In this document: piece by piece, positions 1,076 to 52,300 of the stretch
How the letters are laid out: each line of letters begins with the position of its first letter
Position numbering within the stretch: the stretch's first letter is position 1
Assembly: GCF_006345805.1 (NCBI RefSeq)
Contig: NC_043014.1
Coordinates: 3,968,001-4,032,000 of the forward strand
Direction of reading: 5' to 3'
DNA from: Octopus sinensis
Taxonomy: Eukaryota
DNA length: 64,000 bases
Program-made: the position numbers and the translations under genes
Notes under the pieces: model-generated
Database searches by the model: none
Told to the model about the DNA's origin: nothing
Seen by the model: only the letters and a program-made list of their open reading frames with translations

Positions 1076-4000
1076 TCAATATTTACTGCAAACAACGCAG
1101 GTTAATTCTTGGCCATTGACATACGGTGGACATGGCCACGAACCACAAGCAGCCTGAACGAAATATAATAGAGCTCCATTTTCGTTTCTGTAACCAGCTG
1201 GATCAGCTTCTGGTGCATAATCCACACACACATATTCATGTCTGCCCTTATGAGCATAATGTTCTGCCATCAAATATCCTGAATATTCAGCTGTCCAACC
1301 AGCGTAACACTGTGTCCTGGCTGGTAACATCATAACAACAGCAGGTTGTAGTGTCAAACAGACAGCGCACGGAACGTTGTGATCATGAAGTGATTTAGCG
1401 TTAGCAAAAGAAAAGAGTTTATTCGAGTTGTGGGATATTTCATATTCACTGCCATAAATGTAACCACCTTTTTCAACTTCTGTAGTATAATTGGCCCAAA
1501 TGGGATCGTTAGGTAAACACAACAGATTGCTTCCGCCACCAGTATGGGTTTGATGTTGTCCACCAACCACACCTAGAATTGGTAAGAATATATCAAGTAA
1601 AAAAGATATTAAGCAAAATAACGGAAATATTCATTACAATTTGACCCTTAAAAGGAGTCATGTTTAGTCGCGTGTGAACGAATTGTGGTGTATGTGTTAG
1701 TGCTTATGTGAGTGTAAGCAGTGTTGCTGTATGCATGAAATCCTAGATGTGCATTTGCATTCTCTTCATATATATATATATATATATATATATATATATA
1801 TATATATATATATCGAAGTAAGCAAGAAGGATATCCAGAGATAATGCAGTACGATTGTTTCATGCAACTCCATTTAATTGAACAATTCAATCATTGCATT
1901 AATTTAAAATATAGAGGAATCTTCAGCTGCACAAATACATAGAATTTAATTAAATTAAAACAGATTGAGACATTAGTATAATTATACCTAAAATCTCCAA
2001 GAAGTTAAGGAGATACACAAAGAACTGCTTGTCTCTACTTCAACTTAGAAGTTAATAAAATTATCAAGAAATTTATGAATACTTATGAATACAATAAGTA
2101 TTCAACAATTTCTATCATTTTGTTATAATATTCTTCTTAATAATCCTTTGGAAAACCCTAAACTTCAACTGTATTCATAGCAACATTGTTTAAAATATTT
2201 AACTATAATATATGATAAGACATTCCGTTTCATTGTCAATAGTCTGCCAGTGTGCGACCCCCTTAATTATCAGCTAACATCTTGTTTTAAGTTTTCCCTT
2301 ACTAAACCTCATGGTATTGCTTATAATGATTCTTGATTTTTTTATAATTATACTAACTAGAATGTATATCTACTCCCTCATCCCTCCCCCTAACAGATAC
2401 TGCCCCATGCTCTCTCAGCCTTAGATATAGAAAGGATTTTTAAACAATTAAAACTGACCCCATAAAGACAAAAAATCAATGGTAAGTTGAGTCTTCTTGA
2501 TAATTTTAGTAACTGCTATGCTGAAGTAGAGACAACATGTTCTATGTAATTTCTTGGGGATTTTAGGTATAATTATACAAATGTGTCCATCTGTTCTAAT
2601 TTCATTAAATGCTACGTCTTTTAGCAGCCGAGGATTGCTCTAAATTTTAAACTGATGTAATGATTGCATTGTTCAATTAACTGGTGTTGCATGAAACGAA
2701 CGTACTGCATTATCTCTGGATATCATCGTTGCTTATTTTAATTTTAATCACCTTAAGTAACATATTCATCTGAATCAATATATATATATATATATATATA
2801 TATATATATATATATATATATATATATATATATATATATATTATATATGTAAGTATATGTATATATATGTTGTGTGTATACGGGTAAGTATTTGGGGATA
2901 CGATGTGGATTATTATGTAAGTTTGCATGGGGATGTGTTTTGCGAGGATGTTAATTGAAGGAGAAAAAGAAAGGAATTCGGTAACGCATGTACTCGTGTT
3001 TATCCGAAATGGAAAATGTGTTCACGAGTGAACGGGGATATTTTGGTGATGGAGTCGGCGATCGATAAAGGATACGTGTAGGATTTATAAAGAGCAGATA
3101 CAGAGCATTTTTAAGGAACGTGAGGTTGATTGGGGAAGAGGTTTGTAGCAGCAGTTTTGAATTGGAAGTTTCGGAATTACCTTACAAAGTTATACTGGAT
3201 AATTAATGAGGTGATGTGGTGCATGAAAAGAGCAAGGTTTTAGCGATAGGACGATTTCGGTGAGGCGGAGAAGAATAGAAGTGCATTCTGTACTCTGTTG
3301 TGTTCTCTCACTAATATTTAGTTTCTCTCTATTTTACTTAATGAATAAAGTCCTTAGCTTTTTCCATCAGTTACAGTATGTGGCTTGTCCAGTCCTCATT
3401 CTACATTGTGCGTTCATTTCATTAAAAATTTACAGTCACTGTCATCAATTCTAATAGACTCTATTAAATTTAGCCCACACCTACGATCATTGGGCACTCT
3501 AGTTAAAGATAGTCAAGTGGCCACTTTTCAGCTCTGGTAACTCACGTACAATAACACCATCCGTAGCCAGTACACTTTATCACCAGTTTGCGGCCTCGGT
3601 ATTTGATATCTACAATCCAAAGCTGGTCAGCCTGAAATTCATGATCGCCATGGTGGTTTTCAGTCCAGCCCCTATTTGTAATTTAACGTAGAGATATCTA
3701 TATTCTGTGGTTAGACAACATCCTTTTCACTTGGTCCGTAGTAGACAACATACAATATTCTGATTTGACCAAATACCTACAAAGAGTAAGCAGTCTTGTT
3801 TAGTGTCTGTATAGTCTACAGGTATAGACGTTTGAAACGTGACATATCATAAGAGGATTTGAGAACGTTTATGTTACACAAGCCGACAAAGGGTGAGTGT
3901 GTGTGCAAGTGTGTGAGAGAGAGGGTGAGAGAGAAAGAGAGGCAACAAAAAGAGAGAATGAGAGGTATAAAAAGAGAACAAGAGGAAAACAAAAAGAGAA

Positions 4001-49303: not shown

Positions 49304-52300
49304 TCAATATTTACTGCACACAACGCAGGTTAATTCTTGACCTTCGACATACGGTGGACATGGCAATGAACCACAAGAAGCCTGAACGAAATATAAAGAA
49401 GCTCCATCTTCGTCTCTGTAACCTGCTGTATCAGCTTCTGGTGCGTAGTCCACGCACACATATTTATATCTGCCCTTATGATTATGATGTTCGGCCATCA
49501 AATATCCTGAATACTCAGCTGTCCAACCAGTGTAACACTCATTCCCGGCTGGTAACATCATAACAACAGCAGGTTGTCGTGTCAAACAGACAGCGCACGG
49601 AGGGTTGTGATTATTAAGTGATTTAGCGTTAGCAAAAGAAAAGATGGCATTGGTGTCGTAATACTGTATTTGATATTCACTGCCATAAATCCGACCACCA
49701 TTTTCAACTTTTGCAGTATAATTGGCCCAAATGGGATCGTTGGGTAGACACAATAGATTACTTCCGCCACCTGTGTTTTCATGAAATTGTCCACCAGCCA
49801 AACCTTGAATTGGTAAGAATAAATCAAGTAAAAAAGATATTAAGCAAAATTATATATGAAATAACGGAAACATTCATTACAGTTTGACCCTTAAAAGGAG
49901 TCATGTTTAGTCACGTGTGAACGAATTGTGGTGTATATGTTAGTGTTTATGTAAGTGTAAGCTGTGTGTTGCTGGATGGGAGTGCGCATGAGTTTGCAGC
50001 TGTGCGTTTCTCTTCTCTTCATGTGTGTGTGTATGTGTGTGTGTGTGTACGGGTAAGTATTTGTGGTTGTGATGTGTATTGCATGGGGTAGATGTTCGTG
50101 TGTAGATGTCAATAAACGGAGAAAGGAAAGAGATTTTGTAACGCATGTGGTCGTGATTTCCCGAAATGGAAAAGATGTCGTTCACGTTCGAACGGGAAAA
50201 TTGTTGGTGATGTGAATTGCATGTGGTTTGAGTAGAACAATACGAGAGACGGCGAGATGCAGAGAACTGGTGGGTAAGAGGGGATGAAATACTGTTTAGC
50301 CGACCATAAGGGCGTGGCTGGCTATATCCATCGGTTTGTCTCGGACGAGTCAAGCCTATCACGAGACGGGCCTACCACATACTATAATATTATGATCACA
50401 CAGATTTTATTTCATGCAAAGCACGAACTGAGGTGGGGTGAATTTTGAAGCTCATTGATGGCGTAGTGCTTAAGAAGAATGGACAGCGGAAAGGCGACCA
50501 ATAAAGGATATGTGTAGGGTTTATAGAGAGCAGATTCACAATGGATGCGAGGTTGGTTAGAGAAGATGTGGGAAGCAGTAGCTTTGGATTGGAAGTGTCG
50601 GCGTTACCTTACCAAGATACACTGGACAATTAATGAGGCGACGTGGCGCATGAATTTTGAAGCTCATTGATGGCGTAGTGTTTAAGAAGAATGGACAGCG
50701 ATGTCGGCAACCGTTAAAGGACATGTGTAGGGTTTATAGGGAGCAGATTCACAAAGGATGCGAGGTTGGTTGGAGAAGATGTGGGAAGCAGTATCTTTAA
50801 ATTGGATGTGCCGGCGTTACCTTACAAAGATACACTGGACAATTAATGAGGGGAGGTGGCGCATGGAAATAGAAAGGTTTGAGGGATAGGACGATTTCGG
50901 TAAGGCGGAGAAGAATAGAAGTGCAATATGTACTCACTTGGGTTCTCTCAGTGGTACTTAGTCCCTCCATATGATTCTTAATAAATACAGCCCTTAGTTA
51001 GCTTTGTCCATTAATTACAGTGTGTGGTTTGTCCAGTCCACATTGTACATTCTGCGTTCATATCATTAACCATTTACAGTCACTGTCATCAATTCTAATT
51101 AGACCTTGTTCAATTTAGTCTATAACAACAATCAATAGTCAATTTAGTTAATGTTAGTCAAGCTGCCATTCTTCACCCGTGGTCATACTCGTACAAAACC
51201 ACCATCCGTAGCCAGTACAATTTATTACCAATTAGCAGGCTTGGTATTTGATATCTACACTCCATACCAGTCAGCCAGGAGTTCTTGATCGCTATACTGG
51301 ACCCCAGTCTAGTCCCTATCTATAATTTAAAGTACAGATGTCTATATTCTGTGGTTAGACAACATCCTTTTCATCTGGTCAACGCTAGACAACCTATAAA
51401 ATTCTGATTTGACCAAATACCTACAAAGGAATAAGCAGTCTTGTGCAGACTCTATATATCGTTTCAAATGTGATATATCAGATGATTTGCTTGAGTGTGT
51501 GTGCGTGTGCGTGAGAGAGGGGGGAGAGAGAGAAGAGCGATACAATGAGAAAATGAGAGGTATGAAAAGAGAAAAAGAGAAAGATAATGAGAGAAGGAGT
51601 GGACAGAAGTATAGTTTGTACTAACCGTCATATACAAGGCTTGAATAAGGAGAACAACTTGTTCTGCCCCACCGTGTATACAATGATCCGGGACCAGGTT
51701 CTGTGAAATTAAAATGAAACAATTTAGTTTAAAAGAAAGAATTCTTGAATCCTATACAAAGGAAGTTGTTGGCTTGGAAGGAATTGATAGAGAGGAGAGA
51801 AATTTAAAATTTAAGAGAAAAAGAATGAGTGAATGAATGAAAATCAGAATGAAAGAAGTAAAGGATTCGCTAAGAATAAATTTTAAAGGAAGAAAATTAG
51901 TCATTTGTCTATTGAGCCTGTTGTTGACGTTGATGTCAACGAATTGAGAGATTAATCTCAGAATATCAGAATGTGTATTTGGCTCCCTTAAGAACGGATG
52001 TTTGGATTGTAGTTGAACTTGGATGTGAGTATATATATATATTTGTGACCATAATGATGATAAAGTTCTTCTTTTATAGATATGTAGGCCATATTGTCAA
52101 TTCTTGGCACCTGATTGGTCAATTACAAATATCAGCTTGGTGTTTGGCGCGAATCAGGCCATCATAGCTACAATATGGAAAGGGCTCGAAGGAATAGCCA
52201 TACCGCGTCATCCATCGAGAGGGATAATATTAGCGTACGGATCTTGAGTGGAGGAGTCCATTCGGGAAATATATTGCAGTCTCCACTCATCTTAATCTAG

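What the first reader, a model, noticed from the sequence alone, without database searches (positions are those of the whole stretch)
1076..49803. Constant anchor, hypervariable head: CDR-like patches in the terminal exon
Seen: genes 1 and 2 differ at 1 of 91 residues in exons 1-3 but at about 29 residues plus one indel in the ~165-aa terminal exon (hand count). Across five copies the variation clusters: GQ[HQTH/FFDH/WYDD/WFDH/FHEN]; E[KGGY/KCGY/EGGH/DGGW/NGGR]I; EY[[43 protein letters not shown]]; YLM[AEHYAH/TARHDH/SSLHAE/SSNHKE/AEHHNH]KGR; and G[YRNEN/YSNED/AKNEN/YRDED]GA. The Cys residues, [19 protein letters not shown] and [10 protein letters not shown] are fixed. The patches are rich in aromatic, His and charged residues. 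Inference: diversifying selection on a binding surface (pathogen, allorecognition or chemosensory ligands). Homogenisation of the 5' exons by gene conversion is the alternative explanation.
Basis: partly seen in the sequence, partly recalled or inferred. Interest (0 to 1): 0.85.

Follow-up and report, generated by a model that had tools for sequence, protein, structure and literature searches.

The report
Octopus NC1-like genes with variable loops
A tandem cluster of octopus genes encodes small membrane-anchored proteins whose collagen-IV-like head keeps a fixed scaffold but differs between copies in a few surface loops, which gene conversion reshuffles; the data do not show that natural selection drives this variation.

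Summary
The window is Octopus sinensis chromosome CM016876.1. On its minus strand it carries three complete four-exon genes (g1-g3), one gene without a first exon in the window (g5), and one orphan terminal exon (g4). All are annotated 'short-chain collagen C4-like'. g1 and g2 differ at 1 of 91 residues in exons 1-3, and at 29 residues plus one indel in the head.

The proteins have an N-terminal membrane anchor, a short stalk, no Gly-X-Y collagen repeat, and a 10-cysteine head. The predicted fold of the head matches only collagen IV NC1 domains.

In 18 O. sinensis paralogues, variation falls in loops. It is strongest at two pseudo-symmetric beta-hairpin tips (P1, P4). In collagen IV these hairpins govern trimer assembly.

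Positive selection is not shown. dN/dS in the patches is about 1 against their own dS. It is 1.7-3 against the exon-wide dS, but a synonymous-site control with the same ascertainment gives 2.5.

Two things are shown:
- Gene conversion between paralogues is pervasive. The PHI test gives p<=0.001, loop cassettes are shared, and an orthologous head is about six times more diverged than its flanks.
- Exon 1 is homogenised (pS 0.015, against 0.17-0.20 in the head).

This is a new variant of a known family, and its function is unknown.

The parts
13742..13885 (-). g1 exon 1: start codon, 15-aa cytoplasmic tail, hydrophobic signal-anchor ([18 protein letters not shown]), start of stalk
   Evidence: tblastn; GT donor; spliced ORF; hydrophobic segment at about residues 15-33; AF2 helix 16-49
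6943..6994 (-). g1 exon 2 ([17 protein letters not shown], Lys/Asp/Pro-rich stalk)
4031..4105 (-). g1 exon 3 ([25 protein letters not shown]; first strands and first Cys of the NC1-like domain)
1076..1572 (-). g1 terminal exon (164 aa plus split Gly plus stop). Patches: P1 1544-1555, P2 1460-1471, P3 1418-1441, P4 1250-1267, P5 1178-1192
26810..26953 (-). g2 exon 1
22707..22758 (-). g2 exon 2
19590..19664 (-). g2 exon 3
16587..17086 (-). g2 terminal exon, identical to the head of XP_036366807.1 (P0012). P1 17058-17069, P4 16761-16778
41648..41791 (-). g3 exon 1
37370..37421 (-). g3 exon 2
34433..34507 (-). g3 exon 3
32299..32798 (-). g3 terminal exon. P1 32770-32781, P4 32473-32490
46085..46581 (-). 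g4: orphan terminal exon with intact ORF and AG acceptor but no exons 1-3 of its own, lying 2.7 kb downstream of g5's stop
   Evidence: scaffold dN about twice that among g1-g3
49304..49803 (-). g5 terminal exon. P1 49775-49786, P4 49478-49495
51626..51700 (-). g5 exon 3
54413..54464 (-). g5 exon 2. A second exon-2 copy lies at 57808-57858. No membrane-anchor exon 1 was found upstream within the window or the next 2.8 kb

Best explanation
The window holds part of a large tandem family in Octopus sinensis. Each gene encodes a protein of about 255 aa with three parts:
- a short cytoplasmic tail and a signal-anchor helix (exon 1);
- a Lys/Asp/Pro-rich stalk of about 40 aa with no collagen repeat (exons 1-3);
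- a 10-cysteine globular head of about 185 aa (end of exon 3 plus the terminal exon).

The head is the NC1-type domain of spongin short-chain collagens, which are distant relatives of collagen IV NC1.

Shown:
- The head scaffold is under purifying selection.
- Nearly all amino-acid variation sits in loops. It is strongest at the tips of the two pseudo-symmetric beta3-beta4 hairpins (P1 and P4) and in the long loop P3.
- The heads are mosaics. Short ectopic gene-conversion tracts between paralogues move loop 'cassettes' around.
- The exon-1/promoter region is kept almost identical in all copies by concerted evolution.

Inferred:
- The conserved scaffold-coding stretches supply the homology for conversion, and the loops travel as passengers.
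- This gives a germline repertoire of heads that share one anchor and differ in a His/Tyr/Trp/Phe-rich recognition surface.
- In collagen IV the same hairpins control which chains assemble. The thing recognised is therefore either a partner head or an external ligand.

The selection regime on the loops is neutral to diversifying. dN/dS above 1 is not demonstrated.
For: Family and fold:
- Best named hits are 'short-chain collagen C4-like', and collagen-bearing members from other phyla reach E 1e-43.
- The AF2 model has pLDDT 88. Its 29 best PDB matches are all collagen IV NC1, with probability about 1 for the best of them.
- hhalign gives a local match to human COL4A1 NC1 (E 6.5e-5) that places P4 on the SM1' hairpin. 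The role of SM1/SM1' is taken from PMC6211539.

Architecture:
- Cephalopod members have a hydrophobic segment at about residues 15-33 and no Gly-X-Y run. Distant members have 8-23 triplets.

Selection and variation:
- Strand and helix columns have pN 0.043 and pS 0.178.
- High-entropy columns are 28:3 in loops.
- P1 and P4 never vary in length. They use the same His/aromatic alphabet in 44 cephalopod and 64 other-phyla sequences. Their entropy is equal in the two groups, although mean domain entropy is 1.14 against 1.70.

Recombination:
- The PHI test gives p<=0.001, and p=0.004 on third positions.
- The P4 cassette is nucleotide-identical in four paralogues that carry four different P1.
- The flanks tell different histories: intron 3 groups g1 with g2 and g3 with g5, while the 3' flank groups g1, g3 and g5.
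- In the O. vulgaris/O. sinensis orthologue pair, the flanks differ at 6 of 1183 sites and the head at 15 of 495 (p=7e-8). At 9 of those 15 sites both states occur in other paralogues.

5' homogenisation:
- pS is 0.015 in exon 1, 0.083 in exon 2, 0.091 in exon 3 and about 0.17-0.20 in the head.
Against: - No expression data could be examined.
- g4 and g5 lack an exon 1 and show relaxed scaffold constraint. Part of the array may be decaying.
- Foldseek TM-scores are low (about 0.2). Pfam C4 and PDB sequence searches find nothing.
- The membrane anchor rests on hydropathy and an AF2 helix, not on a dedicated predictor.
- No coordinates were available, so whether P1-P5 are exposed or adjacent in space is unverified.
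- dN/dS above 1 fails the controls. A functional role for the variation is an inference from loop-length and alphabet conservation.
Confidence: 0.55

Rival explanations
1. The patches are a ligand-binding surface under positive diversifying selection from pathogens, allorecognition or chemical cues, like an innate immune receptor repertoire.
For: Loop location. His/Tyr/Asn/charged enrichment. Loop length is fixed while residues change. Patch dN exceeds same-exon dS 1.9-fold, and about 3.2-fold for P1 and P4, in 13 paralogues outside the window. A family peptide was detected in O. vulgaris ink (PMC10142993).
Against: dN/dS against the patches' own dS is 0.7-1.0. The ascertainment control gives 2.5-fold for synonymous sites. 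Hairpin pN lies below the 95th percentile of window pS. P5 has a ratio of 0.5. Pervasive recombination inflates such tests. No immune or chemosensory expression evidence was found in the literature searched.
Confidence: 0.25
2. Assembly code. As in collagen IV, the NC1-type heads oligomerise, and the variable beta3-beta4 hairpins decide which paralogues can form trimers or dock head-to-head. The diversity would then specify partner choice rather than foreign ligands.
For: P4 aligns to the collagen IV SM1' hairpin. P1 aligns to SM1 by pseudo-symmetry and DSSP. In collagen IV, SM1 and SM1' face the trimer tunnel and are key determinants of protomer formation, and the same sheet layer forms the protomer-protomer face (PMC6211539). 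NC1 is described as a recognition module (PMC5395295).
Against: The oligomeric state is unknown. There is no triple helix to register chains. Spongin NC1 domains are reported to lack the domain-swap hairpin (PMC5395295). Residues at a symmetric interface are usually conserved, not hypervariable. No multimer modelling was possible.
Confidence: 0.2
3. Neutral contrast. The loops are simply unconstrained, and the rest of each gene is kept similar by purifying selection and concerted evolution. 'Hypervariable patches' would then be a by-product with no functional meaning, and several copies would be decaying.
For: Patch dN/dS is about 1 with high dS. Exon 1 is homogenised. There is pervasive conversion. 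g4 and g5 lack exon 1 and have about twice the scaffold dN. Truncated heads occur in neighbouring loci. p4141 has lost the conserved LYF motif.
Against: P1 and P4 show no indels in the 18 O. sinensis and 5 O. vulgaris heads examined. The His/aromatic alphabet is restricted and conserved across phyla, with aromatic or His at P1 position 1 in 17 of 18 and at position 2 in 16 of 18. All 18 collected heads keep open frames, all cysteines and AG acceptors.
Confidence: 0.25
4. One transcription unit with alternative heads. Constant 5' exons would be spliced to one of several downstream terminal exons, a mirror image of protocadherin/UGT1A loci.
For: The NCBI model XP_036366807.1 (P0012) joins exons at 56820, 56004, 54464 and 51700 to g2's terminal exon 40,234 bp away. 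The model for P0001 spans 117 kb. g4 has no 5' exons and lies 2.7 kb past g5's stop.
Against: g1-g3 each have their own exons 1-3 and a conserved promoter-proximal island. The extra 5' exons in the NCBI models encode no signal or anchor sequence and look like exonised intron. Sister-species models (P0013, P0139) are plain four-exon genes. No read data were examined.
Confidence: 0.1

Closest known systems
Spongin short-chain collagens (SSCC; 'short-chain collagen C4'), Aouacheria et al. 2006; Fidler et al. 2017 (PMC5395295)
   Same: The C-terminal NC1-type domain is homologous, with 10 conserved cysteines and no HSQ motif. The family is widespread in invertebrates other than ecdysozoans. The window genes are annotated with this name.
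   Different: The octopus proteins have no Gly-X-Y collagen stretch. They carry an N-terminal membrane anchor instead of a signal peptide plus triple helix. They form large tandem arrays with loop-restricted variation and mosaic gene conversion. No paper found in the library searched describes this.
Collagen IV NC1 domain (Pfam C4; PDB 1LI1, 1M3D, 5NAX)
   Same: Same fold class by Foldseek (top 29 hits, E down to 5e-5). Two pseudo-symmetric halves. The CAVC...GW..GY core aligns. The most variable octopus loops correspond to the SM1/SM1' hairpins, which determine protomer formation.
   Different: No Pfam C4 hit even at E<=10. The head is about 40 residues shorter. TM-score is only about 0.2. 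There is no attached triple helix. The cross-link and chloride-site residues were not assessed.
Germline-diversified invertebrate recognition families (snail FREPs, sea-urchin 185/333/Trf, amphioxus VCBPs) and MHC/KIR-type conversion mosaics (from general knowledge)
   Same: Tandem multigene family. Conserved scaffold with variation concentrated in loops. Diversity is reshuffled by recombination or conversion between paralogues.
   Different: Unrelated fold. No evidence here for immune expression, for somatic diversification, or for dN/dS above 1.

Membership tests
Spongin short-chain collagen (SSCC) family | C-terminal NC1-type domain with significant sequence similarity to named family members | tested here: met
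   152 hits. Octopus, Argonauta, Capitella, Dendronephthya, Branchiostoma, Mytilus and Actinia proteins named 'short-chain collagen C4-like', with E from 1e-96 to 1e-29
Spongin short-chain collagen (SSCC) family | Ten conserved cysteines (seven shared with collagen IV plus three spongin-specific) and no HSQ motif (PMC5395295) | tested here: met
   Cysteines at 80, 109, 160, 163, 180, 207, 234, 239, 250 and 253 (P0013 numbering) are conserved. TRWGRT and LPARTK stand where collagen IV has HSQ. Which cysteine corresponds to which was not mapped one by one.
Spongin short-chain collagen (SSCC) family | Short collagenous Gly-X-Y domain N-terminal to the NC1 domain | tested here: not met
   No Gly-X-Y run in the window proteins, and none beyond a single 3-triplet match in the cephalopod relatives. 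No Pfam Collagen hit, whereas Branchiostoma and metagenomic members have one. A membrane-anchor helix and a 40-aa stalk stand in its place.
Collagen IV NC1 (Pfam C4, PF01413) | Match to the Pfam C4 model | tested here: not met
   No Pfam family at E<=10 for the full-length protein, or at E<=1 for the head alone. A PDB sequence-profile search finds no collagen.
Collagen IV NC1 (Pfam C4, PF01413) | NC1 fold: two homologous beta-rich subdomains | tested here: inconclusive
   The Foldseek top 29 PDB hits are all collagen IV NC1 (E 5e-5 to 3e-2, probability about 1 for the best), but TM is about 0.2 and rmsd about 18 A. The DSSP pattern repeats in the two halves. hhalign gives a local match of 42 columns, E 6.5e-5, probability 64%.
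Collagen IV NC1 (Pfam C4, PF01413) | Trimer and hexamer assembly with chloride sites and a Met93-Lys211 sulfilimine cross-link | not testable with these tools
   No multimer prediction or coordinates are available. The alignment outside the core is too weak to place these residues.
Positively selected immune-type receptor repertoires | dN/dS above 1 at the putative binding sites | tested here: inconclusive
   0.7-1.0 against the patches' own dS. 1.9 (P1 and P4 3.2) against the rest-of-exon dS. The synonymous ascertainment control gives 2.5, and pN lies below the 95th percentile of window pS.
Positively selected immune-type receptor repertoires | Immune expression or induction, and binding of non-self ligands | not testable with these tools
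   There is only a proteomic peptide from O. vulgaris ink (PMC10142993).
Variable-exon clusters with shared constant exons (protocadherin/UGT1A type) | A single set of constant exons shared by many variable exons | tested here: not met
   g1, g2 and g3 each carry their own exons 1-3. At least 13 further exon-1 copies lie in neighbouring arrays. Only g4, and perhaps g5, would need borrowed 5' exons.

The most novel reading that the evidence does not exclude
Cephalopods turned a matrix-protein end-domain into a cell-surface repertoire. Membrane-tethered NC1 heads would trimerise and dock head-to-head as collagen IV NC1 hexamers do. The His/aromatic hairpin tips (P1, P4) would set paralogue-specific trans-recognition of self, kin or target. 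Gene conversion would keep generating new combinations, partly from anchor-less donor exons such as g4, in the way pseudo-V genes act as donors.
Probability: 0.1. Interest if true: 0.85.

Novelty: new variant of a known kind. Interest (0 to 1): 0.5.

Why it matters
Spongin-type short-chain collagens are widespread in invertebrates but functionally obscure. This work describes a lineage-specific form with three properties:
- It has lost the collagen helix.
- It has gained a membrane anchor.
- It has expanded into arrays whose copies differ almost only in the hairpins that control chain recognition in collagen IV.

If the variation is functional, the family would be a previously unrecognised recognition repertoire in an animal known for other large surface-receptor expansions. 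It would also give a tractable system for asking what the NC1 fold recognises.

The locus is also a clear case of opposite outcomes of gene conversion within one gene. The 5' exon is homogenised, and the 3' exon is turned into a mosaic. It shows why single-tree codon tests would mislead here.

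Tried and rejected
Searches that found nothing:
- Pfam on the head and on the full protein.
- PDB sequence searches with a single sequence and with a profile, which gave only chance hits (ATP synthase, galectin).
- Rfam over the whole window.
- Literature searches for octopus and this family, which returned only an ink proteome table.

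Steps that failed:
The O. vulgaris relative P0013 was used instead. Its first 91 aa are identical to g2's.
- A multiple alignment of the flanks was too disrupted by indels to read. It was replaced by pairwise segment alignments.
- Look-ups of P0001 (gene range too long) and P0014 (not on record) gave no DNA.

Selection tests not trusted:
- Nei-Gojobori dS inside the patches is unreliable. Multi-hit codons are path-averaged, and identical-residue codons show 16% against 13% synonymous change.
- Single-tree parsimony counts gave site-level p-values of 2e-4 to 4e-3 at columns 6, 8, 46, 106 and 108. I rejected these as evidence because recombination is pervasive. A recombination-proof lower bound (number of residues minus one) is not significant.
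- The 'independent' test on 13 other paralogues was downgraded after the synonymous ascertainment control.

Idea rejected:
- That low divergence of the 5' exons between g1 and g2 needs a special explanation. For that pair it simply matches the local intron divergence of 3-7%. The family-wide exon-1 result is what shows homogenisation.

Full report
**What is in the window**

Each sits in an open frame that ends in TGA and follows a polypyrimidine/AG acceptor.

A protein search with one head returns 152 relatives. The closest are Octopus sinensis, O. vulgaris and O. bimaculoides proteins named 'short-chain collagen C4-like'. One of them, XP_036366807.1 (P0012), has a head identical to the second copy. 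Its gene lies on O. sinensis chromosome CM016876.1. Window positions 6587-64000 match that record exactly.

Mapping the relatives' N-terminal parts back on the window and reading the splice sites gives these models:

| Gene | Exon 1 | Exon 2 | Exon 3 | Terminal exon |
|---|---|---|---|---|
| g1 | 13885-13742 | 6994-6943 | 4105-4031 | 1572-1076 |
| g2 | 26953-26810 | 22758-22707 | 19664-19590 | 17086-16587 |
| g3 | 41791-41648 | 37421-37370 | 34507-34433 | 32798-32299 |
| g4 | none | none | none | 46581-46085 |
| g5 | none found | 54464-54413 | 51700-51626 | 49803-49304 |

- g1-g3 are complete four-exon genes and translate without stops to 255/256 aa.
- g5 has no exon 1 in the window or in the 2.8 kb beyond it.
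- The genes are copies of a tandem unit of about 15 kb that is roughly 90% identical.

- g1 and g2 differ at one residue in 91 (N34H) in exons 1-3. In the head they differ at 29 residues plus one indel (Fisher p=2e-5).
- Variable columns cluster: 27 adjacent pairs against 18.6 +/- 2.9 expected, p=0.0036.
- The patches are enriched in aromatic residues plus His, and in charged residues.

**What the protein is**

- *Anchor.* Exon 1 encodes a 15-residue polar start followed by a hydrophobic stretch of about 19 residues. AlphaFold models this as one long helix (residues 16-49). I read it as a signal anchor that places the cysteine-rich C-terminal part outside the cell. That reading is an inference from hydropathy and charge.
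- *Stalk.* Exons 2-3 add a Lys/Asp/Pro-rich stalk with no Gly-X-Y repeat.
- *Loss of collagen.* All cephalopod relatives share this layout. More distant relatives (Branchiostoma, cnidarians, many metagenomic sequences) have 8-23 Gly-X-Y triplets and a Pfam Collagen hit instead.
- *Head, by sequence.* The head has no Pfam match and no sequence match in the PDB.
- *Head, by fold.* A confident model (pLDDT 88, above 90 across the head) has collagen IV NC1 chains as its 29 best PDB matches, with probability about 1 for the best and E down to 5e-5. TM-scores are low.
- *Head, by profile.* A profile comparison with human COL4A1 NC1, whose sequence I verified against 1LI1, aligns the CAVC...GW...GY core at E 6.5e-5.
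- *Agreement with the literature.* Spongin short-chain collagens are described as truncated collagen IV variants with ten cysteines and no HSQ motif (PMC5395295). The octopus proteins have both of those features.
- *Conclusion.* The genes belong to the spongin-type NC1 lineage but fail one defining feature, the collagenous domain.

**Where the variation lies**

From five neighbouring O. sinensis loci I collected 13 more intact terminal exons, making 18 in all.

- The same places vary in all 18. Of the 31 high-entropy columns, 28 fall in predicted loops (Fisher p=7e-5).
- Strand and helix columns are under clear purifying selection (pN 0.043, pS 0.178).
- The two most variable patches, P1 (GQ[xxxx]) and P4 (YLM[xxxxxx]KGR), are the tips of the hairpins that follow the long strand of each half-domain.
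- The hhalign match places P4 on the collagen IV beta3'-beta4' hairpin. P1 is its pseudo-symmetric partner.
- P1 and P4 show no indels in the 18 O. sinensis and 5 O. vulgaris heads examined. They use a restricted His/Tyr/Trp/Phe-rich alphabet, with aromatic or His at P1 positions 1 and 2 in 17 and 16 of 18 copies.
- The same alphabet, with the same entropy, is seen in 64 relatives from other phyla. Over the whole domain the cephalopod set is much less diverse (mean entropy 1.14 against 1.70).
- These are therefore old 'variable within an alphabet' positions, and they have been re-explored quickly in octopus.

**Is it positive selection?**

| Measure | Result |
|---|---|
| Whole-head dN/dS | 0.34-0.70, with dS 0.18-0.34 |
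| Patch dN/dS, Nei-Gojobori, own dS | 1.0 (dS 0.75) |
| Patch dN/dS, tree-based counts, own dS | 0.7-0.8 |
| Patch dN against rest-of-exon dS, 13 other paralogues | 1.92 (CI 1.24-2.99) |
| Same, P1 and P4 alone | about 3.2 |
| Same, P2 and P3 | about 1.7, CI includes 1 |
| Same, P5 | 0.5 |

The patches' own dS is partly an artefact of path-averaging in multi-hit codons. Codons with identical residues show 16% synonymous change in patches, against 13% elsewhere.

Two controls remove confidence in the excess over the rest of the exon:
- Non-patch columns picked for the highest synonymous diversity in the window genes show a 2.5-fold excess in the same 13 paralogues. Shared ancestry alone can therefore produce the effect.
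- With loops defined by structure rather than by variability, hairpin-tip pN (0.34-0.37) exceeds mean pS (0.20) but lies below the 95th percentile of pS in six-codon windows (0.47).

Single-tree site tests gave nominally significant sites. I do not trust them, for the reason given next. I conclude that loop evolution is at least as fast as neutral, and that dN/dS above 1 is not demonstrated.

**Gene conversion is demonstrable, with opposite effects at the two ends**

*Within the head:*
- The pairwise homoplasy test is significant (p<=0.001 with all 18 heads, and between 0.001 and 0.009 in the window-only and non-window subsets; p=0.004 on third positions).
- One P4 cassette (ACC GAG TAT TAT AAG CAT ... 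CAT GAG) is nucleotide-identical in four paralogues from two arrays 1.1 Mb apart. Those four carry four different P1 sequences. g3 and p5310 share another P4 cassette that differs at a single synonymous base.

*In the window:*
- The two flanks of the terminal exon tell different histories. Intron 3 groups g1 with g2 (6%) and g3 with g5 (4%). The 3' flank groups g1, g3 and g5 (3-7%) and sets g2 apart (25%).

*Between species:*
- One O. vulgaris head has flanks that differ from O. sinensis p4141 at 6 of 1183 positions. The head itself differs at 15 of 495, comprising 7 synonymous and 8 non-synonymous nucleotide changes (Poisson p=7e-8).
- At 9 of those 15 sites both states occur in other paralogues. 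This points to templated change.

*At the other end of the gene:*
- Exon 1 is almost identical in 16 copies from three arrays (pS 0.015, pN 0.013). The low divergence extends about 100-150 bp into the flanking non-coding DNA.
- Synonymous divergence rises along the gene: 0.015 in exon 1, 0.083 in exon 2, 0.091 in exon 3 and about 0.17-0.20 in the head.
- For the single pair g1-g2, the near-identity of exons 1-3 is simply what the local intron divergence of 3-7% predicts.

**Most likely mechanism**

- *Shown:* a conserved scaffold, loop-restricted variation, mosaic heads, and a homogenised first exon.
- *Inferred:* the conserved scaffold-coding stretches provide the homology for short ectopic conversion tracts, and these carry loop cassettes between paralogues. 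The result is a germline repertoire of heads on one anchor.
- *Why I think the variation matters:* the fixed length and conserved His/aromatic alphabet of P1 and P4 argue that these tips are a working surface and not slack. This is my main reason to favour a recognition role. It is an argument, not a test.
- *What is recognised is open:*
  - partner heads, which the collagen IV analogy suggests;
  - nothing at all.

  I rate these comparably.
- *g4 and g5:* both lack an exon 1 and have about twice the scaffold dN of g1-g3. They may be decaying, may be used through borrowed 5' exons, or may serve as conversion donors.

**Comparison with what is known, and novelty**

The family (spongin short-chain collagens) and its relation to collagen IV NC1 are known, and the genes carry that name in NCBI. 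The library searched contains only an ink-proteome peptide for octopus members. It contains nothing on the three features reported here:
- the collagen-less, membrane-anchored cephalopod architecture;
- the large tandem arrays;
- the loop-restricted, conversion-shuffled variation.

I therefore class this as a new variant of a known kind, of moderate interest. The function is unknown and selection is unproven.

Noticed in passing
window 16587-56820 (and beyond): NCBI gene models chain exons across paralogues. XP_036366807.1 joins first exons at 56820-56737 and 56004-55945, g5's exons 2-3, and g2's terminal exon, spanning exactly 40,234 bp. The model for P0001 spans 117 kb. The extra first exons encode no signal or anchor sequence.
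   Followed up: partly
window 46085-46581: g4 is an intact terminal exon with a good acceptor but no exons 1-3. It lies 2.7 kb downstream of g5's stop. It could be an alternative 3' exon, a conversion donor or a decaying copy. Its head is not among the database proteins retrieved here; the best match is 83% identical.
   Followed up: partly
window 7836-10026 (minus strand): A run of reverse-transcriptase-like ORFs (a non-LTR retrotransposon fragment) lies in intron 1 of g1. It is absent from the same place in g2 and g3, where the unit alignment has a gap.
   Followed up: no
window 59205-63611 (plus strand): A retrotransposon with a gag-like ORF (CCHC knuckle), an endonuclease-like ORF and reverse-transcriptase-like ORFs, in the GC-richer end of the window. 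It sits where g5's exon 1 would be expected.
   Followed up: no
window 14304-14928, 27827-29502, 30055-30537, 42210-42517, 43490-44278: Long (AC)n and (CATA/ACAT)n microsatellite blocks lie upstream of exon 1 of each complete gene. They cause the strong local GC skew at 28-32 kb.
   Followed up: no
window 11226-11725 (intron 1 of g1; equivalent places in g2 and g3): An island with only 1.8-2.4% divergence between the three units, inside an intron that is otherwise 8-30% diverged. It is as low as the exon-1 island. It partly overlaps low-complexity CA-rich sequence. Its nature is unknown.
   Followed up: no
window 16974-16985 (g2 patch P2): g2 has an extra eleventh cysteine in patch P2 (KCGY). 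p5276 and p5310 share it. This would leave an unpaired cysteine on the head.
   Followed up: no
L002 8509-8950; L006 1325-1748; L005 head ending 22052 (p4141): Neighbouring arrays contain truncated heads that lack the 5' part. One copy has the conserved LLYFVQ changed to LLHIVQ. Some family members are therefore degenerating.
   Followed up: no
window versus L002/L005 (CM016876.1 about 4.06-4.17 Mb): The next array, about 30 kb beyond the window, is on the opposite strand. The two arrays are therefore arranged head-to-head. Further arrays lie at 5.24-5.35, 5.88-5.92 and 6.52-6.55 Mb on the same chromosome.
   Followed up: partly
window 50439-50865: A 213-bp unit is tandemly duplicated (2 copies, 90% identical) in g5's intron 3.
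   Followed up: no
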